In this document: positions 29,360 to 63,132 of the stretch, in pieces
Numbering within the stretch: the first letter of the stretch is position 1
How the letters are laid out: every line of letters starts with the position of its first letter
Assembly (NCBI GenBank): GCA_964036045.1
Contig: OZ038378.1
Location: 55,056,001-55,120,000, forward strand
Direction: 5' to 3'
DNA: 64,000 bases
Origin: Eutreptiella sp. 'Long Island Sound 2002'
Taxonomy: Eukaryota > Protista > Euglenida
Program-made: the position numbers and the translations under genes
The notes under the pieces: generated by a model
The model's database searches: none
Told to the model about the DNA's origin: nothing
What the model saw: the letters and a program-made list of their open reading frames with translations, nothing else

Positions 29360-29548
29360 ATGTTCTTCACAAAATGCGCGTACCATGGGGAGAAGACCAA
29401 TGGCCGCATGGAGGGCAAGGGGAAGTTCACCTTCGCCAACGGCAACCACTATGTGGGTGACTTCATGGATGGCATGTTCCATGGTGAGGGCACTGTCTAC
29501 TTCACACCAGAGAATGGGGGTGGCAAATACAAGGCCCAGTGGCATGAG
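29360..29548 (+). CDS. MORN5: MORN5-like/Ig-repeat protein, coding exon 1 (MORN repeats)
   Basis: MFFTKCAYHGEKTNGRMEGKGKFTFANGNHYVGDFMDGMFHGEGTVYF..KYKAQWHE closely parallels MORN5; phase-0 GT donor at 29549. The symbol applies to the N-terminal domain only. Confidence 0.85.
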
Positions 29549-31504
29549 GTCCGTGCAAACCCTTTCCTCTGTGCCGGCTGCAATGTGATCCGCCCACCCC
29601 ATCCCCTCTGCTTGGCTGGCACTTGAAGGAAAGGGAGGCCACAGGGTAGTTTGACCGCTCGTTTCAGAGTTGCAGAGCACCTCCATGGGAACATATTTCA
29701 CCCTGCTATAATCATGAGAAAGGGAGGCACAAATTCTATGTAGAGATGGGAAGTGGTGCACAAGGGAAAGGCATGGACTTACAACCGCATATTTCTCCAT
29801 TTCCCTCTAACCCCCCCCCCCCTGCCCCCCAATGTTCCTGCATTTCCCCCCATTCTGCCTGGGGAACCCTTACCAGTGCAACCCCCCCCCCCCCATTGCG
29901 CTATTACCAACAAAAACATTGTTTTTTTGACATCTCAGCTTATAATTTGCCCATTTTTCCATGAAGCCTCCAGTTGCCCTTTATTGCACAGAGGACCAGA
30001 GGACCAGGGGGGCTATGGACTAGTTATGCCCCATACATACTTGTACTGGCAAAACGCACTGGCGTTTGTGTCCTATGTTACAGGTCACTCACTGTTGCTG
30101 GCCGTCGTCGCGCGCCCATTTGAGCGCTGGTGTGTGGCAGTTGGGTTTGTCCCGCAGGCTCAATATCTCTTTCTCTTGCAGTTGGGTAGAGTGCGATGGG
30201 CACACATGCCCTATTTGGCTTTAAAGGCTAAATCCTTTTCCAAGGCACGACAGGGGTTGCCAGTGATAATGCCGGAGGATTTTAGTGTAGACTCCATGCC
30301 AGCATGACATAATGCATTGTTCGTTGATGACCATGGTTACAGTTACTTCTCGCCCTCACTGGTTCGCCGGGGAATCTCACGGTTCTCACAGATTTTCCAG
30401 CATGGCTCTTTGTCCGATGGTATCATTCTGCCACCTTTCTTTCGCACTGTATATGAGCGTGCGCAGGGGCTTATTACTGATGGGCGCCAGAGGAAGAAAG
30501 TGCAGAGGCAGAAGTTCCTCTGGAGGTTTCAGATTTGTGGGTTGTCCCCAAGAGGGCAACCGGTGATGCCGACATCGGGGATGTGTATGGTGTTGCCTAG
30601 GATGAGGGCGAGGCCACTGATGAGGAGGACTTGGATAGGGAGGGCGAAGTTGCTAGTAGCTCTTCTTCTGACCTTCCTAACTTGCCAGCCCTGTCCTCTA
30701 CCTCCGCTCCCTCCGCTAACCATTCCGCACAGTTGGTTTTCAAGTATGATGTGGATGAGGCGTCGTTGAGGGCCATGGAGAGGGGTAAGTTGCATGAGTG
30801 GACGCATGGTTTGAGCGTGAGAGGGGCAAAGGGTGACCTTATGGGGCGGGTTACGGCGCATTTCAAGCAGGTGTACTAGGTGTAGGGATTGTCAGCCGCG
30901 CCATTGGCGATGGAACATTCGGGGGGTCGAACGCTGTGGCACTTCATTTGATGCGAAAAAAGTGTGATCTTCTTCATTTTGAATTGTGCAGGGTGTCATG
31001 TAGGGTTCGGATGCCTTCTTCAAACACATTTGGGGGCAGGAACAAATGCTTCAAAAATTGCACCCATGAGGGGATGGGAACCAATGGTTGAGCAACTGGG
31101 AACCCATGGTTAAAGACATACAAGGCTAGTAACAAATGGTGAAATGGAGTGCCCGCGGGCGTTTTTGGGAAACCTGTGTACAGGAACACCTTTTTTTTTG
31201 TGTTAAGGACCACCCTGCCTTCTGCATTGCACGGCCATCAACATCATCTGGCTCACAGCACCAGGGTGGTCGGGCTGCCTGAGGGTTGCCCTGCGGTGGT
31301 TGTGATGCGGACGGACTGCTCCCTGACAGGAGTGACCTAGTTGTGCATGGATACTTGTCCTGCCCCTGCCCCATCCGCATAACATGATCCTCACAGGGGG
31401 GTTCTGCGAATGCAGCCTGCCTGCCCTTCCCCTCTCCTGTGCCTCAGGGCGCCCGCTATTTCTTTGCAGGGCCACTGCTCCCTCACCCCACAAATCTCTC
31501 ACAG

Positions 31505-31764
31505 GGCGTTGCGCTGGAGGGCACGTACTACTTCTCGGACACGCTGGAGTTCGATCCCGACGACTGGCAGTACTTGACCGCAAAGGACCGCCAGTTCTGG
31601 CGCGAGCACAACGCATTCATCGTGCCCCCCATCGCAGCCCCCATGATCTCCTGCATCATTCCGGACTATTCGGGTGGGAAGGTGCTGGATGTTGTGGCAG
31701 ATCCGGAGTCCAATCCGGCCTGGACCATTGATGGGCCCAAGCCCGATGACCCCCATCACCTCCG
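31505..31764 (+). CDS. MORN5: Coding exon 2 (MORN5-like C-terminal part)
   Basis: AG acceptor 31503-31504; GVALEGTYYFSDTLEFDPDDWQYLTAKDRQFWRE parallels the MORN5 GTYTFSDG..W.YC..DRRFY segment; phase-2 donor at 31765. Confidence 0.85.
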
Positions 31765-32279
31765 GTTTGTGTGTGTGCATGGGCCCATGGCAGGTAGAGG
31801 TAGAATAGCTGAGTGGCATCCATGCACCAGGGCACAATTTTTATAACTTCTGGCTCATGGGGTCACTGAGACGGCTGAGGTTATTCCTTCTGCCCCATCT
31901 CAGAACCCCTGGGTCAAGGATCTTTTGCTGTGGCAGCTGGGCCACATGACCTCCACTACCTAAAGCTCGTGGCAGGTACGAAATAGGACACAAATCCATC
32001 ATGCCTGCATAATAGCAAAGACAGTTTAGACATTCAGTTCTTTAGCTTTGCTGCTTTTTGGACCAGCCCATTAGTAACTCCCTCTGACCACACTGGACAT
32101 TGTACCAGGAATTCCCGACCTGCAACGTGAGTATTATACCATTGGATGGGTCGCAGGCGCAGCCCCGCCCTCCTCTAGGGGAAAGTGGGTGATAAGCTCA
32201 AAGGCTTACTGGGGTTCTCAGATACGTATGGGTGGAGGACAGTACAATCACCTAGTGCGGCCTTGCAGAGCTGTGCATA

Positions 32280-33086
32280 CAGGGGGGGGGGGGATTTCGC
32301 GGCGGGATTATTTCGCCGTGGGATATTTCGCATTTCAAATTCGTGCGAAATTTCCCACGTAATTTTCAGGCCGCTGTGCGAAATAAACCGCTGCGAAATT
32401 TAGCAAAATGTCTTGTCCAACAGTTGCCTGAGCATAAGTCTGTTGTGCCCTTCCACAAGAGCTGAAACAGAGAAATGTTGCCGTCAGAATCTGTAATGGG
32501 GGATCTTGTGATCGTACGTTTCTCATCGCTGTACGCAAGGTACACTTGCGAACTTTGCCTGCAGCTTGCTTACATTCTTTGCAGGGATGGAGAATAATAG
32601 ACAGCAGTCTCGTCCATAGCCAACTGCCATTAATGGCGTGCTGAACTGAGTTTGCCTCAACTGTTTTTGTGCACCCCAGCCAGTTTTTTCTCAGCTGCAA
32701 TTGTCAATTGCAGCCATCTAAAACAGTTCTTCAACTGTTCATTGCAGCCTTTGTTCAATGGTCTGAGTGCAGAGTATTGTGCCTTGCAGGGATGGAATGG
32801 CAACAGCAATGCATCAGAAAACACCAGCAACCACCAGGAAATAACAACAACCACCATTGAAGTAACAACAACCAGCAACCAGCAACTCATCAGGAAGGAA
32901 CAGCAACCCTCTAGGACTCACCCGCAAAGCATCAGTGAGTAACAGCAACCACCACCAGCCAAAGGTTGGCTCACAGCATGTGGGTGCGAAATTTCCCACA
33001 GCAAATTCAGGTTTGCATTCGAAATAAACCCGCTGCGAAATATCCCATGGCGAAATAATCCCGCCGCGAAGTCCCCCCCCCCCCTG
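32280..33086. mobile_element. 807-bp Tc1/mariner-type MITE in intron 2
   Basis: TA|CAGGGGG..atttcgcggcgggattatttcgcc on the left and ggcgaaataatcccgccgcgaagtccccc..CTG|TA on the right: ~55-bp TIRs with TA duplication. Confidence 0.8.
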
Positions 33087-35838
33087 TACTTGCCATTGGC
33101 AACATGTCACCAGTAACTAGTACTATGCACAAATGGCGCCGTCTTCGTCGCTCCATCCCATCTCTATCCCAGCTTTGTCTCTTACAACCAACCCATGCTC
33201 TGGGTTGGCTGGGTTGATTGGGGCCCTACCATACCCATGGCCGTTCATGCAGGAAGGGTGGATTGATTTTGGTGGGCCCAACAGGTTCCTAGACCACCAT
33301 GGTGTAAGCAGGGCTATTCACTGAAAAGTGGTGCGTTAAAATCACGTTAAATCACGTTTTACTACGTTTTGAGCTGTTTTGCCAAGTCACGTTGAGCCAT
33401 GGTAAGTCGCGTATCATTGGGTTTTGTAGTTGCTTAATTTTTGTATCGGACGCGTTTGTCTGTGCTCCTTTTTGTTATGGCGGATGACCAAGAGACCGAA
33501 CACAGTGCAACAGGACCTCAGAAAAATAAAGCATGGAAGCGGGTAGCATTTTCAATGCTGTAAAATGTGCCCAGCAATTTCTTGACGAGTTCATTGCCAG
33601 GGCAAGGACATTATGCGGTGTATGCCATGCTAATGCTCTGTGTCCTGGCTTGAGAAGAGCCATGCAAACAACCATCTCGCGTCCGCTAGCCACAAATGTG
33701 CCAAGTTGAATGCGGGGAAGCTAAATCCCCGAAATATGAGAGACATGGATGCACGTTGGGACTGTACTCAGATTTTTTGCTCTGCCACTTTCAGACGATG
33801 ACAATGATGACTTACGGGACTCCAAAATGAAACACGACAGGCAACTACAAGAGGAATGGGGCAGGTACACCTGAATTGAGAAGGTTGATGTGCAGTGTTG
33901 TGTCCAGAAATCACTTTAAAAAGCACATTAAATCACATTAAATCACATCAAATCACATTATATCATGGTTCATCCGGGTCAGCCCCATCGCATGTTTATG
34001 AAAAACTGTGGTGTGAGTAGTTTCTGCCTGCATAGGTCTCACTGGATAAAAACACACCAACCAAACCAAACCAGACCCTCCCTTCCTCCCTCCCTCCTGT
34101 CATCCAGCAGCTGAAGTCAGACAAGCTGAAGTCTCACAGGCAGGAAGTGGTGGGAGAGAACTTGGAGGTGGTCACCCAAGCCTGAAGAAGCGAGATTCCA
34201 TGTTGTTCTGGTCGGACCAGCCAAAATGGCAGCCCCCAATTCAATGGCATCCTTCTCTTCCTCCTTCCCCTTCCCCTCCCTTTCTCCCTTCCCATGGGGG
34301 TGTTATGTCTAAGGCTGAACCCCCAGCCCAGGGCTTCTTTAGAATAATTAAATTCCAAGGGGAGGGGGGGGAGGGGGTGCACCCCCCCCCCCCCATTCCC
34401 ATTCCAATTCCACAAATGTTCATGTTGGTGGTTCATGATAGTGCATGACAGTGCATACTTAATGGGGGTCCCCTCCTTCATTGTGGGGGACCCAATCTAC
34501 TATCTACCCCCTTCTCCTTGCTCTCAACTCTTCCCACCCTCTGTAAAAACAAAGCATTGGGGGCCTAGGATTGCGTCACTTCCGGAAACTTTTGTTTTTC
34601 TTTCTTTATCTTTTTTTCAGGTCGGTTCAGGTCGCTTTGTGCAGGTCTGTTGCCAAGGTAGGCCAAGGGGTTCTTTGGCTGTTTGTGGCGGGCCGAGAGG
34701 ACGCCTTGGCACCACAGAGTCTAGGAGAGCAAAGTAGAGGGTTACCATGATACTGTTAATATCTACACTCATCGATGGCCAAACGCTTTTTTACTCCACC
34801 TGCTCCTCGGGCAATGGAAAGCAAGGAATTTGTTCTAGCTGTTCTGTTTTTCCGCTACCATGATTGTCAGAAGGGTGCCAATAAGAAGGATGTATGGAAT
34901 GTAACACAGAAGACAACCTCCCACCGCATGACCCACCCTCTGCCTCTTCGCAAGCAACTCATCAAGGAGGCAAGAAGCCAAGCATATTCAGAATTCCGGC
35001 TATTGGCCTTCGGCTTGAAGACCTTGTACTTGTAGCCCATGGTTGATGCTTGTTTTGCCTGCCACAAGCCACGCATTGGGTTCTCATCGCTCCAACAGGC
35101 CTACCGCTGCGCTCATCTGTGTAGTCTTGATGCCTGAACCCCCCGTTGCGCTATGTCAACCCTTCGTGCCAGCCTTGTTGCAATCTTTGGCCTCTTGAAC
35201 AAGGGGGTATCTATTTTTGAGTTTTGGAGGCTCGTCATTCAACAGCTTAATTTTTTCACCCCTTTGCATGTAATTTTGCAATGTACCCTTGCCCTGACAC
35301 CCACCAGCTGTGAAGCCATCCGACGGTTGCGTTTTTTTCACAGATGTTGCCAAGAGACGGACAGCGGGCAGGTACAGTATTGGGATTGTGAGGGAGGGGG
35401 GCCGTTGGCGTAGCTACAAGGCCCCAAGTCGTCGAGACGCTCCAACAAGCGGAGCTTTATGCTGCACTGTTTGCTCTCTCCTTGGGTTGCTACATGCGCT
35501 ATGTCGTGGTGGGCACTGGCAGTGATGTCAGTAGGTCACAAATTTTAAGCATGAAAGGAGGGATTTTTTCCTGTGCTCGCAGTAGCGTATGCTTCGTGAG
35601 TTGTTTTGGTTACGAAGTTGGAGTGACTGCCCCGTGGGCGTTTTTCGAGTCTGCACTGATGTGAACCCTACCGACGCTCCAAGTAAGCTGCGAACCTTTC
35701 ACACGCACGGTGATGTCACTGAGTGTGTTAAGCTCCGACAGGCAGCTTGGAAAGGGGAGCTGAACCCGTTTATGTGTCTCGATTTCCTCCCGAGGTTTGC
35801 TTGGCGAATGGCTTGATCTCTCGCATTCGCTCGTATAA

Positions 35839-35922
35839 GGGTTGGCAGCTTGGTCTGCATGTGGAATAGTGAGTTTTTCTGGGTTGGCAGCTTGATCTGC
35901 ATGTGGAATAGCGAGTTTTTTG
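35839..35922. repeat. 42-bp tandem duplication
   Basis: gggttggcagcttggtctgcatgtggaatagtgagtttttct repeated with few changes. Confidence 0.8.
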
Positions 35923-38900
35923 CTTGTTTTGGCTGCCCTCGTTTGCACTAAGGAACGACAGCATGCCTGGAACGACAGCATGCCTGAACATGCAACAGGG
36001 CGTGCCCCACGGTTTCCAATGTGCTACACAGCATGCATTTCGGCCTACCATACACTTTCGGCTGTGTGTGCCCCAACCGGTCGTTTCCCCCCACAACGAA
36101 TCGCGCATGATGCCCACTTTAACTTTGCAACATGTTCCCCAACCAGCACCCTCTGATGCTCCACTTCTTGCCCCAACATCTCAAAAGACCTAAGCAGTCC
36201 ATAAGACATGGTGGAACCACCCACAATCTCGGGAAACGCACTGGCACCACCCCCCACACGTCCACATCCGCACCCATAACTTCCACGTGAGGGGTAGCTT
36301 CTTTCCCATATCCTCCAGGGGCTCTCTTGTGGGGATGGCGATGTATCCAGACCAAATGAGACCGCACATCTTAGGGAAGTGTTGTGTCTGACTGTGTTTG
36401 TTGCTTTCAAAACAAACAAGGTCACTACACCCAAGATGTCACTTGCCGTGACACATGTGAAACACAAAAGGGCTAGGGAGGGGAAATCAATTCGGAGGCC
36501 GTCGGGCTGTTTCCTCCGACTGGGGAGCTATGTGGCTTGGTACCCCACCATAGCACCCACCACAGCCCACACGCAGTTGAGGGTTGCCCCCAACGACAGG
36601 AGGTAGTGCCACAGTACCACCAACATGGCTCTGAACCCCCGAATAAGCTTAACTAAAATCTGTGTGTCCCTTTCCGCAGTGGTCTGTACCTTCCCTAGGA
36701 CCAGGGTCTCCTCTATTTGCTCGAGCCATGTCATTCCTTGGCCCCAATCATGGCCATGCTCCCCGTCCCTTTGAGCCGTAGAACCACAGTCTTGTCCATG
36801 CTTGGGAACAATTTTGTTGTCCCTTCCATATGATTGCATGAGGTCGCTAGACACCGCCATAGAAACCGAGACAATTACCACAGCAACAACCACGATAAGG
36901 ACATGCGCCGGACACGAAGATAGGAGCCACCACACCAACTACCCATTACACTAAAATTCAAGAGCCGCGGACAGTGTCACACCACACCACACGACCACCG
37001 CACCTTGAACAGCTACCACCAAAAGGCAACGGACACCATCAAACAAACACAGCACCCAACACCGCACAGCATGCAGGCAAAGCATGACAAATGGGTAGGA
37101 GGAGTTGTTGGACTAAAGTGCAGCGAAAATTTTGGCTGTGTTGTTGGTTTGCTGGAGGTGTACCAGGACAAAGGCTGAACTTGATAGAAGGTTGGTGGCA
37201 TGGATGCCTTGTCCCCTCCCAATGCTCGCTATGTCCTTTGAAGAGCCATCGGTAAAACCAGGTGATTACCTTGTTCACTCAGTTGTAGAAGCAGTTGTTT
37301 GAGTTCAAATTCCCTCTCCTTTTTCCGTTGTTGTTTGCGCTCCACTTTTGCCCGGTCCTTGTTTTTGCTTTGAGGGGATAGCCAAGCCCCCCGGTTTGCC
37401 CTGCCCGGCTGCCAAGCTACTAGCTCTAGTGCCCCCCCCCTTCCCCCCCCACTGGGCCATGGTGCGCGCTGTGCACATTGTGCGCGCAAAAATTGCTGTT
37501 CTATTTTGTTGTTATGGCAACGTTCCGGGAAGTTGTTCTGGCGATGTTCTAGCGGCATTCCAGCGGCCACTAGCACACCACTAGAACGTCGTCGGAACAA
37601 CTGACCAAAACGCCGCCGGAACAATTTTTTTTTTGCCAAAGCTGACACCACCCTCCTTCTTGTATGTGCAGGAGGGGATGTCGGAGGGGGATGCCTTGCA
37701 GCAGGCTCTAGCAGTGCCACCTCCAGGCCCCAACTCCGCAGCTAGGCTCTCATGGCCACCCACTAGCTCTGTGTGGGCTTCAACAACCCCACCTCCATCC
37801 CCCGGATCAACCTGCTCGGCACGCATCGGCCGCCCTAGCTCAACGGGCACCGTTGGACGCCCAATACCGGTCTCGCACGACAACAACAACGTGAAGGCCG
37901 GACTTTTTATGGGGGATCGCCTCCCTGTTGCTTGTGCCTTGGAATGGGAGGACAGGGAGTGAAGGGGGGAAGCTAGATCGGGGTGCAGTTTTGGCGAAGG
38001 TAAAGGAGGCGAGGGGGAACGTGCAGAGCATCCGAGGGAAGGTTCAGAGGTTGGAGGCCAAGTTGGCTTGTGGGCGGGAGCTTGGGGACGTTTTGGGTGG
38101 GGGGGGGGGGCGCAAGAGAAAAGTTTTTGGAGGGGAGGTGGCGGTTAAGGGAGGCGCAGAGGGTGGTTGAGGGGTTGGAAAAAGAGTCAGCGGGTATGAC
38201 GATGGTGTGAAACCAAAAGGGGGGGAACAGGGGGCGAAAGTGGAAGTGGGGGACGACATCATTGAGGAGGGGGTGGGAGTGGAGGGGCACCTTGAGGGGA
38301 ACCTTGGGGTTCCCGGGGTAGCAGGGGGGATGAGTCTGAGGGGGGGGGGATGAACCCACCCTCTTGCACGTTACTGAGTGCATGCGCAAGAGGCTTGGTT
38401 CAAGCATTACCACCAAAGTTGCCAACTTCCCTTGGACAAAGGAGATGGTAGGCCCCAACCCTCACCCCCTAGGGCAAGGGTTGTGCACTGCTCCAGGGAT
38501 GCAAATGTCCAAGAATTAACAGCAACCCTCCAGGAATGAACCATCCACCTTTACAACAAAAACCCCATGCCAAAAGCAAAATACCTGCTGCAATACATTT
38601 AGGTGCGCAAAGACAAGTGGGGGGGAGAAAGGCTGGCCAAACCCGCCCCCCCTCCCCCCTCAAAACCCCCTCCCCCCCTGCCCCCCCCCCCCCGCTCAAA
38701 AGGAGCCCTGCTCCAGCCCACCCTCCAGACGCCCAACGTACACCAAGGGAAACTGGAAGTCACCATCATTGCCCTGTGTCTTACACTGCTTGTGGGTGCC
38801 TTTGCTGGTTGATTTGTGCATCTGCTAGAATGCCATGTCATTTTCACTCCATCTCAGCCAGCCGCCGCCCCCCAGGTACAGGACAGGGCGTAACCACAGG

Positions 38901-38953
38901 CGTAGCTCCTAGGTAGGCCTCACCGAAGGCAGATCTGTGCCTAGGCGGCTGGT

Positions 38954-39665
38954 CACTGACACAGCCGGGGGTATGGCTCAGCGAACAGCAAGCAAACACG
39001 ACAACAACGCTCATGGAGAGCTGCGGGGCACTCCGCCTGGCAGAGTGCTTGCACCCTGTGTTGAAAATTATTGCCGTTTGGATTTTTTAATGTGTTGGTG
39101 CCAAGACCCGCCACCAAGGAAAACTGAAACACTGGGTCAACACAGTAGCTTGGTGGATCTTCGTGAGTGGTAAGTCGATTGACGCTGCCAACTGCTAGGA
39201 GAGCAGAAAGATTGTAGGGCGTCCCAAACCCCCCTTGCACTACGCTTGGCGTAGTTTTTCCACACATAGGGGCTTTTGACAGCGTGTCCCCATAGGTGTA
39301 GGTGGTCCCAGGTAAGCCTTGGCGAAGGAAGGGCTGGTCATGCACAAGTGCTCCAATGCGGCTTGCCACTGACATAGCCTGAGGTATGGCTACAGTGAAC
39401 AACAAGCAAGCATGACAACAAAGCTCGTGGAGAGCTGCGGGGTGCTCCGCCATGTCAAAGTGCTTACGGTCCGCATTGAAGATTGTTGCCGTGCGGATCT
39501 TTAATTTGTTGGTGCCCCGATCCCCCATGATAGAGAAACAGAAATGGTGGACCAACACAGCAGCTTGGTGGATCTTTGTGAGTGGCAAGGAGTCGATTGA
39601 TGCCGCCGCTTGCTAAGAGAGCAGCAACATCTGAGGCTTGTCTCCAAACCCCCCCTCCCTTGCCC
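38954..39665. repeat. Diverged ~413-bp tandem duplication
   Basis: cactgacacagcc..ggagagctgcgggg..gcttggtggatct at 38954 recurs at 39367. Confidence 0.75.
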
Positions 39666-40420
39666 TCTGGGCTCGATGCAGTTTGGTCAAGGGCTTGAGC
39701 CAACATTGAATGTTGGCACCAAAAGGCACCGGACGATTTTTTTTTGCATATGCATGGTTTTTTTTTTTGTCACAGTTGAATTACATGGCTGCAGATTTGA
39801 GGCAGTTGACTTGGTCTGCATAGTTGCCTCCAGGCACAGGGCACCAGGTTGCACAGGTACAGACCAACATCACTGTTGCGGGGCAAATGAGCCATACCCG
39901 AGCACCTACAGGGTGGTGTACAAAAGTGTGTTGTTCTCCATTGTGAATCACTGTGCACATCACTTGATGACATTTTTGGAGCAAAAGGAAACCAGGAAAG
40001 TATCCTGCCATGGAATACAATGGGAATCATATAGCCAGTTTGGTGGCTATCAGCCATCCCCCCCCCCCTGCCCCAACCTTGCACCTCCTCCAGCTCCCCT
40101 CCTGCGGCTCTCCAGGCCCCCAGGCAGTGCGGAAGGGTCCAGTATAGACCTACTGAGCAGGATTCGTGTGGGGAAAACGAGTTTTTGCCCCAATTGTGCA
40201 CACTCAAAGTGCTCAGAACAAAACAGGCAATTTGAGAATGACGTGAAATCCGAAAGACCTTTTTTTTTTAATCCTCCTCCCCAACCACTGAACTGGGCCC
40301 CCAGTTCCTCCCTCCACCCCCTCTCTTGGCCTCATTCTCCTGAGACTCTCCTCCCCCCCAACCCCCCTCCCCCCGCCCCCGCCGCTCCATCCCCATCTCC
40401 CGCCTCCATTGACACTCCAG

Positions 40421-54050: not shown

Positions 54051-54199
54051 GCGGGTGTGTGGGCTTTGGGCTTTGGGCTTGTCTTCCCGATCCGAAGAGG
54101 GCCTTAGGGGCCCACGGAGTGCCTCGCTTTGGGGAAGTTAGGCTCAGGCGCACCGCACTCACTCTCGAACCATGCAGTGCAAGAGCGGGGTATACACCT

Positions 54200-55450
54200 G
54201 CTAGTGCGGACGTGCTTGTGCTGGCATGGGGCATGGGGCATGGTGCACGGCACATGCTAGGTACAGAACCGTTACAGGTACCGTTGCAGGGGTAGGGGGG
54301 AGGGGCAGTGCCAAAGGGGGCAGGGGGGAGGGAGGACCACCTGTGCGGGGCACCGTCGGGGCTCCCGCTCCCCTGCTTCCATGCAGCGATGCATCTGTAC
54401 CCTGTAGCAGTGGGCGGGTAGGGGGGAGTCACGGAGATTCGGTACCGGTAATACAATACACCCTATGGCACAAGCAAGGGCAACACAATGCATACGTGAG
54501 TGCTATTATGCAGGTAGGTAGTACCAGTGGGCAAATGCCGTAAAGTGTACCCAAGGTAATACAGTTATCTAATTTAGGATTACTGTGTTGAGGGAGGGGA
54601 GGAGAGGAGTGCAGCCGTGGGAACGCCCTCCGGCGATGCACGGACAAAGAGTACTGGCAATGATACAATATACCCTATTGCACTGTTACGTAGGTAGGTA
54701 ATACTAGCAGGCACAATACAGATACGTGTAGTACAGCTACCTATACTGTATTTCCCGTGTTGTGTGTTGGGGGTACAAGGGGAAGGAAGGGGAAGGAAGG
54801 GAATCGAACCCGTGACTGCCACTCAGCAGTTCATGGGGTTGACCGCTGGGCCACTCGGCCGGCGGTATAATGGGGCGGGTTGTGAGGGGGAGTGGGGGAG
54901 AGCAGCCGTGGGATCGCCCACAGGCGCCGCTGGAGAGGGGGGAAGGTGGAGCGCAGCTGTGGGATCGCCCACAGGTGCTCCCGGGGGAGGGTGGAGGGTA
55001 GGTGGGCAGCCGTGGGACAGCCCACTGCTGCAGTCGAGGCAAGGAGGGGCGAGAGGGGCAGGGGACGGGGCAGGGGGGAGGGAGGTCCACCTGTGTGGGG
55101 CACCGCCGAAGCTCCCGCTCCTCGGGTTCTGTGAGTGGAGGTACCTGCAGATGTGCTGTGGGGGGCGGTAGGCGAGGGGTCATGGAGATACAGCACTGGC
55201 AATAATACAATATACCCTATTGCACTGGTAGGTAGGTAGGTAATACTAGCAGTGGGCGGGAGGGGGGGGGGGGGCACGGAGATCCGGTACCGCAACTGGA
55301 GGGTGTGCAGTGGTGTGTTCGCCTACTGGCGCTCCAGGGGGAGGGTGGAGGGTAGGTGGGCAGCCGTGGTACAGTCCACTGCTGTAGTCGAGGCAGGGAG
55401 GGGCGAGAGGGGCATGTGTGTGGGGGGGGGGGGGGGTAATCTGCCCAAAG
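54200..55450. repeat. GC-rich composite repeat
   Basis: Recurring caatacaatataccctattgcactg and gcagccgtgggatcgcccacagg units. Confidence 0.65.
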
Positions 55451-55959
55451 ACTGTGGTTATTTAGCCACTGTGGCTATTATAGCTGTTCTGGCAACCTCA
55501 GTGTCGCCATGGTACCCACGCTGAGGGGTGCAAGTTGGGATGTTGTGACGGTGTGTACGTACTAGGATACGAAAGGCCTTTTTTTTTTGCAGTCTGTACC
55601 CTTGCCAAGGGCCGGTCCAAACCCGTTCTAAAGACGCGAATGGAGTATTCCACCAGTAATGGCTTACGTGAAGGAATGGGACGATACACATCCTGCTAAT
55701 GCTGGTTTTCAATAGTGGCACGCGAAAGATCGAAGTTTCCGAAACTTGTTTTTTGATATCATGACCCCACGAAATGACCATCCAAGGGATGTAAAGCATG
55801 TTTTAGACCGTATTTAGGTTTTTTTCACTTTATTTGGGTATGGGGTGCCGGGGTGGGGGGGGGTCTCACAACGGATTGGTACACAACCTGCTTATGCAGC
55901 TTCTCACCCTGAGCAACTTGAAAAATTGAAGATTCCGAAACCTATTTTTTTTTATATTG

Positions 55960-56832
55960 TGACCACATAAATTGAACATCCAAGATATGTGAAGCATGCT
56001 TAAGGAAGTATTTATGTAGTTTGTAGCCTATTTTGGGTGCATGTTGCTCGGGGTAGATCCTCTGCGAGGTGGACTTGCCGAAGACAATAGAATTTTCAAA
56101 TCACCCCGTAGAGGTTGTTAGATCAAAGCCAGGCATGCCGGAATGGATGGGAAAATGCCGCGTTGCCCCCTCATGTTGGGCCTTTTTGGGCTGATTTGCG
56201 TACCCTACCCCCAAAGTTGAATTGTTACTTTAACATCTTGTAAATTCGTTGTCCTTTTAAAACCTGTATAAGCTGCAATAATACGCGCTCATCCCACTCC
56301 ACCCCATACAAAATCCATAGAGTCGAGACCCGGAAACACTTTTGTGGCTAAAAAATTACAAAACCAAAAGAGTCCTGATTTTCAACCAAAGCAAAAGCGG
56401 GGGAGGGCTTTTTTTCGACATGTTTGAGCCCCCCCCCCCCCCCCCATCGCTCCCAAGCCCCTGCGAAAAATGGGTTTCAAGTGGCAGGGTTGTGGGGGGT
56501 TCAGACCAAAAACTCATTGGGGAATGCGGTTATTGGACAAAACAATGCGGTTAGACGGGGTTAAATTAACAATTCAACCCCTTGGGGTACGGTACGCGAA
56601 TAGGCCCCAAAAGCCCCAACATGGGGGGGTATGCAACATTTTCCCATCTATACGGGCCAACCTACTTTTAATCCAACAACCTCTACGAGGTGATTTGAAA
56701 ATTCTATTGTCTTCGGCAAGTCCACCTCGGAAAGGATCTACCCTGAGCAACATGCACCCAAAATAGGCTACAAACTACATAGATACTTCCTAAAACATGC
56801 TTTACATATCTTGGATGTTCAATTTGCGTGGT
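55960..56832. mobile_element. Foldback/MITE with ~170-bp TIRs
   Basis: 55960-56128 is the reverse complement of 56666-56832 (..gacaatagaattttcaaatcacc..tagaggttgttagatc). Confidence 0.75.
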
Positions 56833-57659
56833 CGCCACGATTATGTATAGCGACTTAGTCGGCCATCCAACATCCAACATCAAACTTTTATGGACCACCA
56901 TTACCCAACCATGAACCCCCCTTCCCCCAAACCCCTTGGTTGTGCACTGGATCAGACCCCCCCCTGTCTATGACCCACATCAAACATCTTCATTGGAAAA
57001 AAGCCCCCTCCCCCAATGGTGAACCCCTCCCCCGTGACCCACCCATCCATCCCTTCACTCCTGGGTGCTTTCAAGCAGTCCCCCCCCCCCCCAAGGAAAA
57101 AGCTGCCATGGAAAACATGCAACCCCCCCTCCCCCCGGAAAACAATTGACATGGAAAATATGAACCCCCCCCTTTTCTCCACGTGGGAAATTTACTTAGC
57201 ACATGTTTATTCTCTGTCTATTGCGTCTGGAGTGCGTGTGCGACATGAATCGCATGCGTACTATCTGTGCAAACTGCACAGTACTTTAAGTTCACCTATA
57301 TTATACTAAGTTGCCCCCCCTTACCTAGGGGTTAAAGGGGGGGGTTAAAGGGGGGGGGATTGGAATGGATTGGTTTGGATTGGAGCTTCGCTCTTTTTGG
57401 GAGGGCCATCCCGGGGTCACAGGCCACGCAGCCAACTAGGCTCATGACTCTAACATGCGAACGGCCCCAACACGCCCGGGGACCCAAACTCGCTGCCCCA
57501 CGCCCACATCCATCACTGCCGCAGGGGCCCTGAGTCGGTGCCCCACACATGCACCACGTGCTCGTGGACTTCCGTAGGGGCCCAAAGCCGGTATCCCACT
57601 CAAACTGCAGCAATCACTGTCAGCACCAGGGCCTAAAGCCGGTGCCCCACTCCCACTAG

Positions 57660-58640
57660 ACGCATTCCTACCTTGTTCTCAACGTAAATGAAGGGAGGAT
57701 TCTCGCTTGGGACATGTTCTCACCTTGTTGTCTACGTAAATGGAGGGGGTGAATGGAGGAGGAAAAGTTGATTGGGACACGTGCTCTCCGGGAATGGAGG
57801 GAGAAATTTCGACTGGGACACGTGCTCACCGTGGATTGAGGGTAGATTTTCGATTGGGACGCGGTCTCACCTTGTTCTCACCGTAAGAAGGGGGAGAAAT
57901 GCCGATTGGGACACGTGCTCTGCGTAAATGGGGAGTGGGTTTTCGATTGGCACGCATTCTCACCTTGTTCTCAGCGTGAGTGGAGGGAGGAATTTTGATT
58001 AGGACACGTGCTCACCGTGAATGGAGGGTGGATTTCTGATTGGGACGCGTTCTCACCTTGTTCTCGCCGTGAATGGAGGGAGGAACTTCGGTTGGTACAC
58101 GTGCGCACCGTAAATAGACGGTGGATTTTTCTTTTCCGATCGGGGCGTGTTCTCACCTAGTTGGCACCGTAAATGCACGGAGAAATTTCGATTGAGACAT
58201 GTGCTCACCGTAAATGGAGGGCGGATTTTCGATTGGCGCACGTCCTCACCCTGCTCTCACCGTGGATGAAGGGAGGATTGTCGATTGGGACACGTTCTCA
58301 CCTTGTGATCACCGTACATAGAGGGAGGAAATACGATTGGGATACATTCTCACCGTAAATGGATGGAGGAATTTTGATTGGGACACGTGCTCACCGTATA
58401 TGGAGGGTAGATTTTCAATTGAGACGCATTCTCACCTTGTTCTCACCGTATATGCGGGGTAGATTTTCGATGGGGACACATTCTCACATTGTTCACACCT
58501 TGTTCGCACCGTGAAGGGAGAGAGGATTTTCGATTGGGACATCTTCTCACCGTGTTTGCACCAAGTTCTTACCTTGTTCTCACTGTGTTCCCACCGTGAA
58601 GGGAGAGGCATTGTCGATTTGAGCGTGTGCTCACCGGGTT
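57660..58640. repeat. Minisatellite, ~43-55-bp degenerate unit
   Basis: Repeating ctcaccgtaaatggagggaggattttcgattgggacacgtg(tt)ctcaccttgtt. Confidence 0.85.
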
Positions 58641-59619
58641 CTCACCTTTGTGTGCAGCTTGTTCCCATCGTGTATCCCCGGTCACCGCTCAAAGCGGCAA
58701 GTGCCCCGCTCGGCGACGGAGCAAGGAAGCCACGACAACCCATGCACCCCGAGCCAGGAGGAGAGGAGAGGGGGAGGAGGAGAGGCGGACACAAGCACAG
58801 CTACGTTGAGACAGCGCACAAAACACTGGATGACAAAAGAGAGGCAAAGGAACCAATGGAGGACGGAACGGCAGGATGTGGTTCACTTGGTGAGCATAGT
58901 GTTGTGGCAAGTGAGCTGTTCTACACACGCTCCCCCACAAACAGTGGAGTTCGCCCCACCGCCTCCACTTGCCACTGTGAGCCCGGCTGACGGTGTATCG
59001 CAGCCAACGAACCAAGCGAGACACAGACCCACAACGAGCCATTCACCTCACCCGCTGCGACCACTAGTGGGGGGGGGGGGGGTTAGGGAGGGGGCAGACT
59101 TCGGGGGGGGGGGGGAAGGGGGGGGCAACTTCATGCATACTATCTAAGTTATATTACAAGTAAAGGGAAGCCCCCGTCAAATTCGAACAGGCGCGTATAT
59201 CACAAAGTTTTGGAGATTTCTCAAAGTTTTGAAAGATTGAAGTTTGTTCCTGGCAACGTAATATTCAATTGCTTGTTCACGCAATGCAATATTTAGATTT
59301 TCTTCATATGATCTGTATTTAATGACACTGAGCCCACCTTTGGGCTGCTTTTGAGGTGCTGTTTTGGACCCACCTCATCCATAGAAATGGGTCACAAGGC
59401 CTTTGAAAGACACATCTTCACACCACTGTTTTGTTTGGGCGCAGTGTGTTTTTAGTTGCACATTTTAGTTCCCTATGCACAATTCTACATGGTAACACTC
59501 TGTATTTTCACATGTGCTAGTTGCAAGTTGGAGGGTGTTTTTGAAAAGGTGTCATTTGGCAATTTGTCCATGGTGTCTTGGCTCAGGATTGGGTGCAGAT
59601 GTGCCATGCATCTGAGCTT

Positions 59620-59880
59620 GACCACATCCTGCCACCCTCAACCTCACCCTCAAGCTAACCCTCACAACCTGCCACCCTAACTCTCACCCTCGCCCTTGTC
59701 CTCAGCCTCATCCTCACCCCACTCATCCTCATTTTCGTCCTCTCAATTTTGCCCATACCTACCCTTAAGCACCTGAACTCGCTCTCGCCCCCTCTCAACG
59801 TTACTGTCACCATCACCCTCGCCTTCACCTCCGCTCTCACCCTTGCCCTCTTGCCTTTGCCCTCACCCCCATCCCATGCT
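59620..59880. repeat. (CCTCAC)n-like low-complexity tract
   Basis: Repeated cctcaccct / ctcatcct. Confidence 0.7.
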
Positions 59881-60467
59881 ACTCCTCACGTTCATTGTGG
59901 GGGGGGTTTTGGGGAGGGGGAGAAGTTCGCGGGGAAAATTTCGCCGTTAAGAAGAGTGGCGAACTCCCCCCCCAGCGTGTGGCCAACAACTTCACTGTGA
60001 ATTCAGATGCAAGTGAGTACTGTGAATTCAGACATGTGCAGCAGTGTACCAGGCGGAGGGAAAGGACAAAGATGTGTTTGTTTGCAAAATGCAGTGGTTG
60101 TGTGACTGGAATGCATGAAAAACAAGCGGAACCGTCCAGAGCCCACCAGGAGGTAACACCAAGCTTCAGGATGCGTGCAGGTGACGGAATTTTCCCTTCG
60201 GAGAACTTCCCCGTCGAAATTGCCACCTGGCTACCCCCCCCCCCCCACCTGTAACCCTGACGCTTTCCCTCACTATGTCTTGCTCCTGCTCACTGGAGCT
60301 TCATGATCCTCACCATCATCCTGACGTCTATGCTGGTTAGCAACCGTAGCTCGTTCAATCATTTCTAGAGTTCCTGCTATTATGCACCGTATCATGCAGT
60401 TGCACACTGTCACCATCCTCACTTCCCCTACCCATCGCCTCCTCCCACCCCCCCACCCTGCCCGCAG

Positions 60468-61211
60468 ACCGAGGAGGTGAAGGCGGGCCCGCCTGCGCAG
60501 TTGGATTTCTCTGACATGCCCAAGGCTGTTCTGGAGGGCGAACCACAGCCGTTTGAGGTCCGTGTGTTGGACGACGCCGGGAATCTGGTGACCGATGGTT
60601 CGCCGAAGGTGACGCTGCAACTGGCATCCGGCAAAGGGAAGCTCGGAGGCACTCTGGAGGCCATTGCCGAGAACGGCGTGGCACGGTTCCCGGAGGTCAC
60701 ATACAACGGGGTGGACCCATTCACGGTGAAGGCAGTGTCCAAGGGTCTGCCGTCCAATACCGTGGCAGACCCGATTCCTGTGGTCACCCCTCAAGGCCAG
60801 CCTGCGAGCGTCGAGTCAGCACAAGCACTCGACACAATGGCGCGTGCACGCGACACAATGGCGCTGCTCAAACCGACAGGCCCAGCTGCCAGCGCGGCAA
60901 TGAAGCTGGAGGCCACTCCCCCGGCGTCTGGCATCGAGGCCGGCAAGCCCTTCACGATCAAGGTGGTGTACAAGGACAAGGACGGCGGGCTGGCCCCAGG
61001 GGCCGACCAGAAGGTCAGCGCCAAATTCGTTGCAGCGGACGGCACCGAAGTGCCGCTTTCAGGGCGCACCACCGTGTCTCCGTTGGACGGGGTCGCCACG
61101 TTCAAGGACCTGCAGCTCCCAAAGGGCGTGTCGCTGGTGGGTGGCAAGCTGCTGCTCACGGCGCCTGGGCTCGTGGGCTCTGCTATTAATGTCACTGAAG
61201 ACGGATGTGAG
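60468..61211 (+). CDS. Coding exon 5 (two Ig-like repeats, 248 codons)
   Basis: cccgcag acceptor, phase 0 at both ends, gag|gtagat donor; TEEVKAGPPAQLDF..NGVARF..DGVATF. Confidence 0.85.
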
Positions 61212-62388
61212 GTAGATTCCACTGCCCTTTGTATTCATCGGCACACACCACTGCCTGCATACCCTCCCTGCCGCCCTCGGTCCAGTGTTAGCCATTTTCA
61301 TCATCAGCCAGCAGTAGCCTCAGCCTTGGCGTGGGGAGAGGTCTCCCTTCTGCCGCGCCAGTGTGAACTGGAGGGATGGGGGACCTGGAAAACAGGCTTG
61401 AAAGGCCAGCCAAACATTATTTTCTCTGTTGACATTGTTTCACAGGAGATTTTTTTTGGAAGAAAATGGGCCCGAACCAGATTTGCCTCAACATTGTGTC
61501 AAATCGCTTTTTTGAATATTTTTTAGAAATCCTGCTTTTGGTGGGCCCAGCCTGTGCTATTCCAGGGGACGAGGTCCGGGAAACAGGTGCAAGGGCCCTC
61601 GTTCCGCGGAGTGACAAGGGACCGTGGGCCCTTACCGTCACCTTTACCCTCAGCCTCACCCACCCTGACAATGCCCATTGTATGCAGCTGCCCTTCAGCT
61701 GGGAAGCGACGCTGCTGGTGGACATTTTGAGAGGGATTCTGTTGGAAGGGCGACGGTTCATTGAGGGGCGCACGCCATCTGTGCGGTGGCCAGAGCTGCA
61801 GCAGGAGTGGTTTTCCCAAGAGCTTCTGGAGCAGGGCCAGGAGTTCTGGCAGTGCCATCTCTCAGCTGCTGCCAGGGGCAGAGAGGCTCACAGCGGCGTA
61901 CCCTGACCTGCAACTGGGCAGTCACTGTGGGCCAGTTCACAGACAGTGCAAGTTGGGCAGCGCTGCCCTTACCTTCTTCACAGTCATGGGCACTGGTGCC
62001 CTGTCATTTGACAGCCCCCCCCAACAACAACTACAACCCTCCCCTTTAACCCAGAGGCCAAACGCCTGAAAGGGTGCATACCGCTGATGTTTATCACATG
62101 GCGATCCGGAAACCCATGGCCCTGTGTTCTGTTTCCCAAGTCTGTGGTGGTGACCACCCTTCAAAACTGGTGGAAACTTCGTGTGAAGCATGTTGGCACC
62201 TCATGGAAGATGCCAAGTTGCAGCAGCAGCTGTGAGCAGACCGGCAGCTGCCCCATTCTCTCCTATCAAAAATCTGTTTCCCACCGTCCGTGGACAAGGA
62301 ATGTAGGCATTTTCCTCCTGAAACCCCAAACAGCTGCGTACACCCGGCAGTACGAGCACACTAACTGAGCCTTGCACGCCTTCCCCAG

Positions 62389-63132
62389 ACCGAGGAGGTG
62401 AAGGCGGGCCCGCCTGCACAGTTGGATTTCTCCGACGTACCCAAGGCTGTTGTGGAGGGCGAACCACAGCCGTTTGAGGTCCGTGTGTTGGACGACGCCG
62501 GGAATCTGGTGACCGATGGTTTGCCGAAGGTGACGCTGCAACTGGCATCCGGCAAAGGGAAGCTCGGAGGCACTCTGGAGGCCATTGCCGAGAACGGCGT
62601 GGCACGGTTCCCGGAGGTCACATACAACGGGGTGGACCCATTCACGGTGAAGGCAGTGTCCAAGGGTCTTCCGTCCAATACCGTGGCAGACCCGATTCCT
62701 GTGGTCACCCCTCAAGGCCAGCCTGCGAGCGTCGAGTCAGCACAAGCGCTCGACACAATGGCGCGTGCACGCGACACAATGGCGCTGCTCAAACCGACAG
62801 GCCCAGCTGCCAGCGCGGCAATGAAGCTGGAGGCCACTCCCCCGGCGTCTGGCATCGAGGCCGGCAAGCCCTTCACGGTCAAGGTGGCGTACAAGGACAA
62901 GGACGGCGGGCTGGCCCCAGGGGCCGACCAGAAGGTCAGCGCCAAATTCGTTGCAGCGGACGGCACCGAAGTGCCGCTTTCAGGGCGCACCACCGTGTCT
63001 CCGTTGGACGGGGTCGCCACGTTCAAGGACCTGCAGCTCCCAAAGGGCGTGTCGCTGGTGGGTGGCAAGCTGCTGCTCACGGCGCCTGGGCTCGTGGGCT
63101 CTGCTATTAATGTCACTGAAGACGGATGTGAG
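62389..63132 (+). CDS. Coding exon 6 (near-identical duplicate of exon 5)
   Basis: ctaac branch-like motif at 62361, ccccag acceptor, 744 nt, same donor as exon 5. Confidence 0.85.

What the first reader, a model, noticed from the sequence alone, without database searches (positions are those of the whole stretch)
29360..63132. MORN5-like domain fused to an expanding array of bacterial-type Ig-like repeats
Seen: six exons join in phase with sensible junction peptides (WHE|GVAL, HLR|FEKI, LVQ|GKGT, GCE|TEEV), giving MORN repeats followed by at least seven ~100-aa beta-rich repeats (L.F...P..V..G.PF.V.V.D..GN....V.L....G.L.G......NGVA.F). Established: MORN5 is a small (~160 aa) protein associated with cilia, and this repeat pattern is typical of invasin/Big-like domains in bacterial surface proteins. 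No signal peptide precedes the MORN domain. Inference: a previously undescribed giant cytoskeletal or flagellar scaffold (MORN anchor plus Ig rod), possibly using a horizontally acquired repeat.
Basis: partly seen in the sequence, partly recalled or inferred. Interest (0 to 1): 0.8.

Follow-up and report, generated by a model that had tools for sequence, protein, structure and literature searches.

The report
Euglenid MORN5 fused to Ig-domain rod
In this Euglena-type genome the counterpart of MORN5, a small radial-spoke protein of cilia, is one long gene joined to about twenty immunoglobulin-like domains; the same unnamed fusion occurs in transcripts of two other euglenids, so it is a real, lineage-wide variant that has not been described.

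Summary
Six GT-AG exons on the + strand join in frame. Exons 1-2 encode a MORN5-like module and exons 3-6 encode seven Ig-like domains. The gene continues about 57 kb past the window, to roughly 20 Ig-like domains and then an EF-hand loop.

The doubtful 8.7-kb splice (31764 to 40421) is supported in three ways:
- Exon 3 has no start codon that would keep its first domain whole.
- Paralogues on C7 and C25 read straight across the junction peptide.
- Transcript-derived proteins of Euglena longa (1137 aa) and Rhabdomonas costata (784 aa) are collinear across it, with 7 and 5 of the same domains.

The genome is a euglenid. Its only two loci with the MORN5-specific segment are both fused to Ig arrays.

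The "expanding array" is real: three 1921-bp exon-plus-intron units are 98.7-99.9% identical. The A-type Ig exon is under purifying selection (dN/dS about 0.15-0.18).

The "bacterial-type, horizontally acquired" reading is not supported. The domains stay below every Pfam cut-off, resemble filamin, macroglobulin and GH2 Ig domains about equally, and have no close bacterial relative.

The likely role, inferred only, is docking on radial spoke 3 through the MORN5 module, with the rod as a spacer or tether.

Three other first-reader notes of this scan (s1-203006, s1-206750, s1-203229) describe parts of this same locus; none concerns other DNA.

The parts
29360..29548 (+). Exon 1: start codon and two MORN repeats (63 codons)
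   Evidence: Pfam MORN E 7e-10. Aligns with solved MORN5 residues 2-59. 71% identical to residues 1-63 of R. costata P0008 and 80% to E. longa P0007. It is the best match in the whole genome to the MORN5-like protein P0016. Donor GAG|GTCCGT.
29549..31504 (+). Intron 1 (1956 bp, GT-AG, phase 0)
   Evidence: Splice sites read. The junction WHE|GVAL is collinear with P0008 residues 63|64.
31505..31764 (+). Exon 2: MORN5-specific segment, conserved 'IIPDYS' stretch and a linker ending PHHL(R)
   Evidence: Residues 1-35 match only MORN5 among solved structures (E 3.7e-5). Residues 1-81 match E. longa P0007 residues 48-126 (E 2e-25; E 9e-18 against 1.84 billion proteins). In the C7 paralogue the tail lies on a separate exon.
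31765..40420 (+). Intron 2 (8656 bp, GT-AG, phase 2)
   Evidence: Donor CG|GTTTGT and acceptor CCAG|C. Its long ORFs have no Pfam domain. Paralogues on C7 and C25 read straight across the junction peptide. If the intron is retained, the frame stops at 31844-31846.
40421..40850 (+). Exon 3: Ig-like domain 1 and the first half of domain 2
   Evidence: Domain profile E 2.5e-41. Residues 1-45 match P0007 residues 136-180, directly after the stretch that e2 matches. The frame opens at 40413 with no Met before residue 23, so the exon cannot start a protein with an intact domain.
41781..42416 (+). Exon 4: second half of domain 2, a Gly/Pro-rich linker and domain 3 (B type)
   Evidence: Its last 347 nt are 99% identical to the B half of the 1921-bp units.
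42417..60467 (+). Intron 4 (18051 bp), rich in repeats
   Evidence: No Ig-like hit on either strand. No Pfam domain in its ORFs. Direct repeats lie 11.6-11.8 kb apart (43656/55461, 43886/55703) and a tandem array lies at 57678-58509. The junction GCE|TEEV is the same as between the tandem units.
60468..61211 (+). Exon 5: Ig-like domains 4 (A type) and 5 (B type); first 1921-bp tandem unit
   Evidence: Domain profile E 1.6e-48 and 5.3e-44. The B domain folds as an Ig-like beta sandwich in AF2, pLDDT 86. dN/dS of the A half against the C7 paralogues is 0.15-0.18.
62389..63132 (+). Exon 6: Ig-like domains 6 and 7; second tandem unit
   Evidence: 734/744 nt identical to exon 5, while the intron behind it is 1176/1177 identical. 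A third unit starts at 64310 and a chimeric fourth at 66378, both beyond the window.
60468..64000 (+). Tandem array of 1921-bp exon-plus-intron units, running off the window
   Evidence: There are three full units, flanked by exons that share only one half with them: e4 shares the B half and the exon at 66378 shares the A half.

Best explanation
This is one cis-spliced gene of a euglenid (Euglena-type) genome, and a member of a gene family conserved across euglenids.

Shown:
- Its N-terminal 149 residues are the organism's counterpart of MORN5, a small subunit of the radial spoke 3 (RS3) stalk of motile cilia.
- Where MORN5 of other organisms ends, this protein continues into a rod of about 20 Ig-like beta-sandwich domains. 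Seven lie in the window and the rest in the next 57 kb. The rod is followed by at least one EF-hand loop.
- The rod grew recently by tandem duplication of a 1921-bp unit, made of one exon for two domains plus its intron. By comparison, R. costata has 5 domains and E. longa has 7.

Inferred mechanism:
- The MORN5 module docks the protein once per axonemal repeat on the CFAP91/CFAP61 base of RS3.
- The Ig rod, at roughly 4 nm per domain and so up to about 80 nm, acts as a filamin- or titin-like spacer or tether inside the flagellum.
- The C-terminal end may respond to calcium.

I put about 0.85 on the gene model and family membership, and about 0.3 on the RS3-anchored role.
For: Gene model:
- Open exons with GT-AG sites.
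- Exon 3 has no usable start codon.
- The C25 paralogue reads '...PHHLNFRAFPEVVQPGTPFSVVV' and the C7 paralogue '...PHHLAFSSLPDVIG' without a break across the e2|e3 junction peptide.
- e2 residues 1-81 align with E. longa P0007 48-126, and e3 residues 1-45 with P0007 136-180.
- P0007 (EukProt EP00668, a transcript ORF) and P0008 (R. costata EP00906) begin with the MORN5-like module. A profile built from this gene's own repeats finds 7 and 5 domains in them.

MORN5 identity:
-.
- With the MORN5-like protein P0016 as query, the best hit in the 2.28-Gb genome is exon 1. The MORN5-specific part matches only this locus and C7:93.72 Mb.
- The C7 locus also carries Ig exons and is collinear with P0007.

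Constraint and fold:
- dN/dS 0.15-0.18 at dS 0.34-0.37.
- Ig-like fold with pLDDT 86.

Expansion.

RS3 role of MORN5: bioRxiv 10.1101/2025.05.19.654877 and PMC12399478. A CFAP91 domain is encoded in this genome (E 1e-44).

EF-hand loop: DIDGDGFIMRHE lies in the same exon as the last Ig domain.
Against: - No transcript of this species was available, so splicing across the 8.7-kb and 18-kb introns rests on comparison, not on cDNA.
- The C7 locus, not this one, is the closer counterpart of the E. longa transcript. This copy could therefore be a fast-evolving or poorly expressed paralogue.
- The exon chain between 67 and 121 kb was mapped only by domain hits, not junction by junction, and the 3' end was not reached.
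- The RS3 location is carried over from mammals and Tetrahymena. A rod of up to 80 nm has no obvious place in known RS3 maps.
- The EF-hand hit is below the Pfam cut-off (E 0.008).
Confidence: 0.72

Rival explanations
1. Two separate genes. A short stand-alone MORN5 gene (exons 1-2, reading through the proposed donor to the stop at 31844-31846, giving about 176 aa) sits upstream of an independent Ig-repeat gene whose first exon receives the spliced leader at 40420.
For: - Read-through of the donor gives a protein of typical MORN5 size (solved MORN5 chains are 170-172 aa).
- Euglenids trans-splice most mRNAs (own knowledge), and the leader sequence is abundant in this genome.
- The C25 paralogue shows no MORN exon within 30 kb upstream.
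Against: - Exon 3 has no Met before the middle of its first domain.
- The last 40 residues of e2 are not MORN5-like. They are homologous to the linker that leads into the Ig array in E. longa, in the C7 paralogue and in the C25 ORF.
- Both euglenid transcripts are continuous.
- A short isoform made by intron retention remains possible alongside the long one.
Confidence: 0.08
2. The window copy is a decaying or non-functional paralogue. The C7:93.7 Mb gene is the working MORN5-Ig gene, and this locus is a repeat-bloated duplicate that is no longer expressed as one protein.
For: - C7 is collinear with the E. longa transcript at higher identity.
- Several introns here are 15-18 kb and one holds a retrotransposon noted by another reader (s1-203230).
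- Fragmentary or frameshifted copies exist on C21 and C25.
- No protein of this species spanning the junctions was found in the databases.
Against: - All six window exons are open with intact splice sites.
- Three near-identical units keep the frame.
- dN/dS is 0.15-0.18 against paralogues.
- The databases appear to hold only prokaryote-style ORF calls for this genome, so the lack of a spliced protein says little.
Confidence: 0.12
3. The Ig-like repeat was acquired from bacteria (invasin/Big_1 type) and then fused to MORN5.
For: - Weak Pfam signals to Big_1, Invasin_D3 and Glyco_hydro2_C5. In R. costata the GH2_C5 hit passes its cut-off (53 bits).
- The nearest named clusters in the ESM Atlas are mostly bacterial.
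- The best TM-scores are to bacterial GH2 C-terminal Ig domains (0.66-0.70).
Against: - No window domain reaches a Pfam cut-off.
- Equally good matches go to eukaryotic filamin (TRIM3, Lin41) and complement C5 MG4.
- No bacterial relative by tblastn in 185,579 genomes, though that scan finds close relatives only.
- The family is at least as old as the Rhabdomonas-Euglena split and carries spliceosomal introns inside its domains.
Confidence: 0.1
4. The protein is a cytoskeletal scaffold outside the axoneme, for example in the pellicle, the flagellar pocket or the paraflagellar rod. The MORN repeats would act as a membrane-binding or dimerising module, as in MORN1.
For: - By raw score exon 1 matches MORN1 best, owing to its many repeats.
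- The fold matches point to filamin-type rods.
- MORN1 proteins form cytoskeletal assemblies in trypanosomes and apicomplexans (own knowledge).
Against: - The MORN5-specific segment after the repeats is conserved.
- No other MORN5 candidate was found in the genome, so this family would have to supply the conserved RS3 function, if that function is kept.
Confidence: 0.2

Closest known systems
MORN5 (MORN repeat-containing protein 5), subunit of the radial spoke 3 stalk (solved in 9fqr and 9d2f; mouse RS3 preprint 10.1101/2025.05.19.654877; Tetrahymena Mrnn04, PMC12399478)
   Same: N-terminal MORN repeats followed by the MORN5-specific segment (GTYxFSDxLxxxxxxWxYxxxxDRxFW), collinear with MORN5 residues 2-95. 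It is the best MORN5 match in this genome. It has no signal peptide.
   Different: MORN5 is a stand-alone protein of 160-175 aa. Here the part after residue 95 is diverged and continues into about 20 Ig-like domains and an EF-hand loop, roughly 2,300-2,500 aa in all. Location at RS3 has not been tested.
Unnamed transcript-derived proteins EP00668_Euglena_longa_P044263 (P0007) and EP00906_Rhabdomonas_costata_P032593 (P0008)
   Same: Same architecture and order: MORN5-like module, a conserved '(I/L)(I/V)PDY' stretch, a linker, then repeats of the same Ig-like family. They are collinear across the e2|e3 junction.
   Different: They have 7 and 5 Ig-like domains and acidic low-complexity tails, with no EF-hand seen. 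The window gene has about 20 domains with very recent tandem units. The closer counterpart of the E. longa protein is the paralogue at C7:93.72 Mb.
Filamin / ABP280 rod repeats, and the macroglobulin (MG4) and GH2 C-terminal Ig-like domains (E-set superfamily)
   Same: Seven-stranded Ig-like beta sandwich of about 100 aa, strung in tandem as a cytoplasmic rod. These are the top Foldseek and profile matches: TRIM3 filamin, C5 MG4, and GH2 at TM 0.66-0.70.
   Different: All matches lie below family thresholds (E 0.007 or worse by profile, under 25% identity). There is no actin-binding domain and no hydrolase or thioester context.
Bacterial Big_1 / invasin-intimin Ig-like domains
   Same: A similar motif (G.PF.V.V.D..GN.V...V.L....G.L......T...G.A.F) and tandem arrangement.
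   Different: Below the Pfam cut-offs, with no signal peptide or outer-membrane anchor. The gene is intron-containing and eukaryotic, and no close bacterial relative was found.

Membership tests
MORN5 | MORN repeats at the N-terminus (residues about 5-60) | tested here: met
   Pfam PF02493 E 7e-10, 38.6 bits against a cut-off of 22.5. Aligns with solved MORN5 residues 2-59.
MORN5 | MORN5-specific segment directly after the repeats (residues 61-95 of mammalian MORN5) | tested here: met
   Only MORN5 chains match e2 residues 1-35 among 177,635 solved sequences (E 3.7e-5 and 0.009). In the genome this segment occurs only at this locus and at C7:93.72 Mb.
MORN5 | Small stand-alone protein of about 160-175 aa | tested here: not met
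   The reading frame continues by splicing into Ig-like domains, and the same is seen in euglenid transcripts of 784 and 1137 aa.
MORN5 | Sits on the RS3 stalk bound to CFAP91, STYXL1 and CFAP61 | not testable with these tools
   Known for mouse and proposed for Tetrahymena. This genome encodes a CFAP91 domain (E 1e-44). No localisation data are available.
Euglenid MORN5-Ig family (unnamed) | MORN5-like module, then '(I/L)(I/V)PDY' linker, then an array of the same Ig-like repeat, in one reading frame | tested here: met
   e2 against P0007 E 2e-25, and e3 against P0007 residues 136-180. A profile of the window repeats scores P0008 at E 7e-83 with 5 domains and P0007 at E 5e-61 with 7 domains.
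Big_1 / Invasin_D3 (bacterial Ig-like, group 1) | Score above the Pfam gathering cut-off | tested here: not met
   Best E values are 0.055 for Big_1 and 0.041 for Invasin_D3 among 12 domains. In P0008 the scores are 17.9 bits against 34.9 and 23.7 against 33.
Big_1 / Invasin_D3 (bacterial Ig-like, group 1) | Secreted or surface-anchored context (signal peptide, outer-membrane anchor) | tested here: not met
   The N-terminus is the MORN module and has no hydrophobic leader. This is by inspection; no predictor was run.
Glyco_hydro2_C5 (PF18565) | Score above the Pfam gathering cut-off of 32 bits | tested here: inconclusive
   Window exons score 21-22 bits, and 7 of 12 domains hit weakly. The R. 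costata homologue scores 53.4 bits. The best TM-scores are to GH2 C-terminal domains.
Filamin repeat | Sequence match to the family, with an Ig-like fold | tested here: inconclusive
   The TRIM3 filamin domain is the top hit by profile (E 0.007) and by Foldseek (E 2e-4, TM 0.52). There is no Pfam Filamin hit.
EF-hand | Canonical 12-residue calcium loop flanked by helices, usually in pairs | tested here: inconclusive
   The loop DIDGDGFIMRHE lies at L017:7559-7594. Pfam EF-hand_5/6/1 give E 0.008-0.019, below their cut-offs, and the exon ends at the last loop residue. No second loop was found up to 144 kb.

The most novel reading that the evidence does not exclude
Euglenids have replaced stand-alone MORN5 with a giant MORN5-Ig-EF-hand protein. 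It is anchored at the base of radial spoke 3, and its rod (about 20, 28 and 80 nm in Rhabdomonas, E. longa and this gene) runs along or out of the 96-nm axonemal repeat. It would act as a calcium-responsive tether or ruler, for instance linking spokes to one another or the axoneme to the paraflagellar rod. That would be a lineage-specific axonemal structure whose length is being changed by exon duplication.
Probability: 0.2. Interest if true: 0.8.

Novelty: new variant of a known kind. Interest (0 to 1): 0.55.

Why it matters
MORN5 was only recently placed in the stalk of radial spoke 3, the least understood spoke. A lineage in which the only MORN5 candidates carry a rod of 5 to about 20 Ig-like domains gives a natural handle on that site. 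The rod should be visible in tomograms of euglenid flagella, and it can be tested by tagging or knock-down.

The locus is also a clean example of a protein growing domain by domain. Very recent tandem duplication of an exon-plus-intron unit is seen here inside a gene that is otherwise conserved across euglenids.

It also shows that gene models for this 2.3-Gb genome miss such genes: the public protein sets searched here hold only prokaryote-style ORF fragments of it.

Tried and rejected
- Word-index protein searches with exon 5 and with the exon 2 frame returned only ORF fragments of this same genome. This says little, because the length limits exclude long proteins.
- Pfam on ten long ORFs inside introns 2 and 4 found nothing, so there is no sign of a gene nested between the exons.
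- The single-sequence AF2 model of exon 5 was poor (pLDDT 59), and its Foldseek list only shows 'two Ig-like domains'. The alignment-based model of one domain was good.
- The scan of bacterial genomes with the domain alignment failed for lack of a conserved stretch. With exon 5 alone it gave no relative.
The 3' end of the gene is therefore not defined.
- A regular-expression search for a second EF-hand loop up to 144 kb found none.
- Literature searches for MORN5 or MORN repeats with Euglena, and for euglenid axoneme structures, found no description.
- The joined spliced protein was deliberately not built or searched; all searches were exon by exon.

Full report
**What genome this is.** The window is C1:55,056,001-55,120,000 of a 2.28-Gb assembly whose largest contig is 200 Mb. 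A 24-nt stretch of the Euglena spliced leader, recalled from memory and used only as a probe, occurs 5,458 times with at most one mismatch, against 0 for the reversed control. The nearest relatives of the proteins below are from Euglena longa and Rhabdomonas costata, and unnamed Atlas look-alike clusters are eukaryotic, one of them mainly Euglenozoa. I take it for a euglenid, probably Euglena gracilis or a close relative. It is not human.

**The observation.** Translation and splice-site reading confirm six open exons on the + strand:
- e1 29360-29548
- e2 31505-31764
- e3 40421-40850
- e4 41781-42416
- e5 60468-61211
- e6 62389-63132

All introns are GT-AG. All junctions are phase 0 except e2|e3, where a codon is split (CG|C, Arg). 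The introns measure 1956, 8656, 930, 18051 and 1177 bp. Together the six exons hold 1001 codons.

**The MORN5-like module.**
- e1 carries two MORN repeats (Pfam E 7e-10) and aligns with residues 2-59 of solved MORN5 chains.
- The first 35 residues of e2 match MORN5, and nothing else, among solved structures, at residues 61-95 (E 3.7e-5).

**The Ig-like domains.**
- A profile of the repeats finds seven domains in the window, with E between 1e-41 and 1e-48, all on the + strand and none before 40419.
- The e3|e4 junction (LVQ|GKGT) falls inside a domain that is uninterrupted in e5 (…LQLASGKGKLGG…), which validates that splice.
- The e4|e5 junction peptide (GCE|TEEV) is the same as the one between the tandem units.

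1. The frame of e3 opens three codons before the acceptor and has no Met until residue 23, in the middle of the first domain. It cannot begin a sensible protein.
2. A paralogous ORF on C25 reads straight through the junction peptide: '…AIEAVPAGPHHLNFRAFPEVVQPGTPFSVVV', against the window's '…WTIDGPKPDDPHHLR|FEKIPPRVQSGIPFEVVV'.
3. A second MORN5-like locus lies at C7:93.72 Mb. Its counterpart of the e2 tail sits on an exon of its own, which reads '…IVPDYANGQVL…MPHHLAFSSLPDVIG' before a GT donor. It crosses the same point with the intron in a different place. Ig-like exons follow for 35 kb.
4. The exhaustive search with e2 against 1.84 billion representatives returned two long proteins. P0007 is 1137 aa, from EukProt Euglena longa, a transcript ORF. 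P0008 is 784 aa, from Rhabdomonas costata. Both start with the MORN5-like module and continue without a break into repeats of the same family. A profile built only from the window gene's repeats finds 7 domains in P0007 (E 5e-61) and 5 in P0008 (E 7e-83). e2 residues 1-81 align with P0007 48-126 (E 2e-25) and e3 residues 1-45 with P0007 136-180 (E 7e-5). The transcript is therefore collinear across the junction.

I did not build or search the joined spliced protein; every search was exon by exon.

**Extent of the gene.**
- Using 80 kb fetched downstream, Ig-like exons continue on the + strand only, to 121,375 in window-based coordinates. That makes about 20 domains in an alternating A/B pattern.
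- There are further long gaps at 68-82 kb and 97-115 kb. Another reader noted a retrotransposon about 37 kb beyond the window's end, at about 101-110 kb in window-based coordinates, inside the second gap.
- The exon holding the last domain runs through a linker into an EF-hand loop (DIDGDGFIMRHE) and ends at a GT donor. The Pfam EF-hand hits are below their cut-offs (E 0.008).

**Expansion.**
- Three 1921-bp units, each an exon for two domains plus its intron, start at 60468, 62389 and 64310.
- Units 1 and 2 are identical at 734/744 exon positions and at 1176/1177 intron positions.
- The flanking exons are half-matches. The last 347 nt of e4 equal the B half of a unit, and the first 360 nt of the exon at 66378 equal the A half.
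- This, together with the 5, 7 and about 20 domains in Rhabdomonas, E. longa and this gene, supports an 'expanding array'.
- The domains are constrained. Against paralogous copies at C7:6.47 and 6.37 Mb, the A-type exon has dN/dS 0.18 and 0.15 at dS 0.34-0.37.

**What the repeat is.**
- The alignment-based AlphaFold model of one domain is confident (pLDDT 86) and is an Ig-like beta sandwich.
- Foldseek gives the TRIM3 and Lin41 filamin domains, complement C5 MG4 and Runt domains. The best TM-scores (0.66-0.70) are to the C-terminal Ig-like domains of bacterial GH2 enzymes.
- By sequence, every hit to a window domain is weak. Pfam Glyco_hydro2_C5, MG4, Big_1 and Invasin_D3 all stay below their cut-offs, and the profile against solved structures does no better than E 0.007. 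Only the R. costata protein passes the GH2_C5 cut-off.
- A scan of 185,579 bacterial and archaeal genomes with exon 5 found no relative.
- The domain is therefore an E-set Ig-like module of no named family.

**What it probably does.**
- MORN5 is a 20-kDa subunit lining the proximal stalk of RS3. With STYXL1 it clamps a CFAP91 helix and it touches CFAP61. Its Tetrahymena orthologue falls in RS3 mutants.
- In this genome the best match to a MORN5-like query is exon 1. The MORN5-specific segment exists only at this locus and at C7:93.72 Mb, and both are fused to Ig arrays. A CFAP91 domain is encoded.
- The most economical reading is that the MORN5 module still docks at RS3 and that the appended rod is a spacer or tether, possibly calcium-responsive. 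This step is inferred, and I put it at about 0.3.
- The rivals are a scaffold outside the axoneme, a non-functional paralogue, and two separate genes. They are listed with their tests in the rival explanations.
- Related MORN5-like proteins with other C-terminal additions appeared in the same search. One, from the kinetoplastid Papus ankaliazontas, carries IQ motifs. This suggests the C-terminus of MORN5 tolerates extensions in Euglenozoa.

**Novelty.** The architecture is not unique to this genome and is already present, unnamed, in public transcriptome proteomes. No paper in the searchable library links MORN5 or MORN repeats to such a protein in euglenids. I rate it a new variant of a known kind and of moderate interest.

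**Other notes of this scan.** Other first-reader notes cover the tandem units and the downstream giant gene with its EF-hand at this same locus. My results agree with them.

Noticed in passing
L017:7130-7639 (C1:55,177,130-55,177,639; 57 kb beyond the window's end): The exon with the last detected Ig-like domain continues through a linker into an EF-hand loop (DIDGDGFIMRHE) and ends at a GT donor. The rest of the EF-hand and the stop codon were not found up to 144 kb.
   Followed up: partly
C7:93,719,494-93,764,210 (L028, L029, L032-L034): A second MORN5-Ig gene. Its MORN5-like part is split over four exons, against two in the window, so introns were gained or lost. It is followed by Ig-like exons collinear with the E. 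longa protein P0007, and it is probably that protein's closer counterpart.
   Followed up: partly
L024:1060-1833 (C25:17.694 Mb) and L023 (C21:11.030 Mb): C25 has a 258-aa ORF holding the linker, PHHL and the first Ig domain. No MORN exon lies within 30 kb upstream, and no further Ig-like domain lies within the 50 kb scanned (30 kb upstream, about 20 kb downstream). C21 has an exon-3-like copy (62% identical) broken by a frameshift. Both look like gene fragments or pseudogenes.
   Followed up: partly
L006 (C7:6.467 Mb, +) and L007 (C7:6.371 Mb, -): Two further copies of the A-type Ig exon lie in opposite orientation 96 kb apart. They are 88-89% identical to exon 5 with an open frame and dN/dS 0.15-0.18, so at least one more Ig-array gene of this family exists.
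   Followed up: partly
window 60468-64309: Between tandem units 1 and 2 the exon differs at 10 of 744 positions (5 amino-acid changes, most in the first 120 nt), while the intron differs at 1 of 1177. This could be patchy gene conversion from a paralogue or selection on the exon.
   Followed up: partly
window 43656-44225 and 55461-56043; 57678-58509: Inside the 18-kb intron there are pairs of direct repeats 11.6-11.8 kb apart (64-74% identical), possibly the ends of an old inserted element, and a tandem array with 41/52/93-nt periods. The ORFs between them have no Pfam domain.
   Followed up: partly
window 31765-31846: If intron 2 is retained, the frame runs 27 more codons to a stop, giving a 176-aa protein of normal MORN5 size. 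A short isoform by intron retention is conceivable.
   Followed up: no
whole genome (G000): A 24-nt stretch of the Euglena spliced leader occurs 5,458 times on both strands, scattered along C1 at least.
   Followed up: no
proteins P0012-P0014: MORN5-like proteins with other C-terminal additions: Papus ankaliazontas with IQ motifs (363 aa), and unnamed proteins of 187 and 435 aa with low-complexity tails. All share a 'TPDY' stretch with the euglenid '(I/L)(I/V)PDY'.
   Followed up: partly
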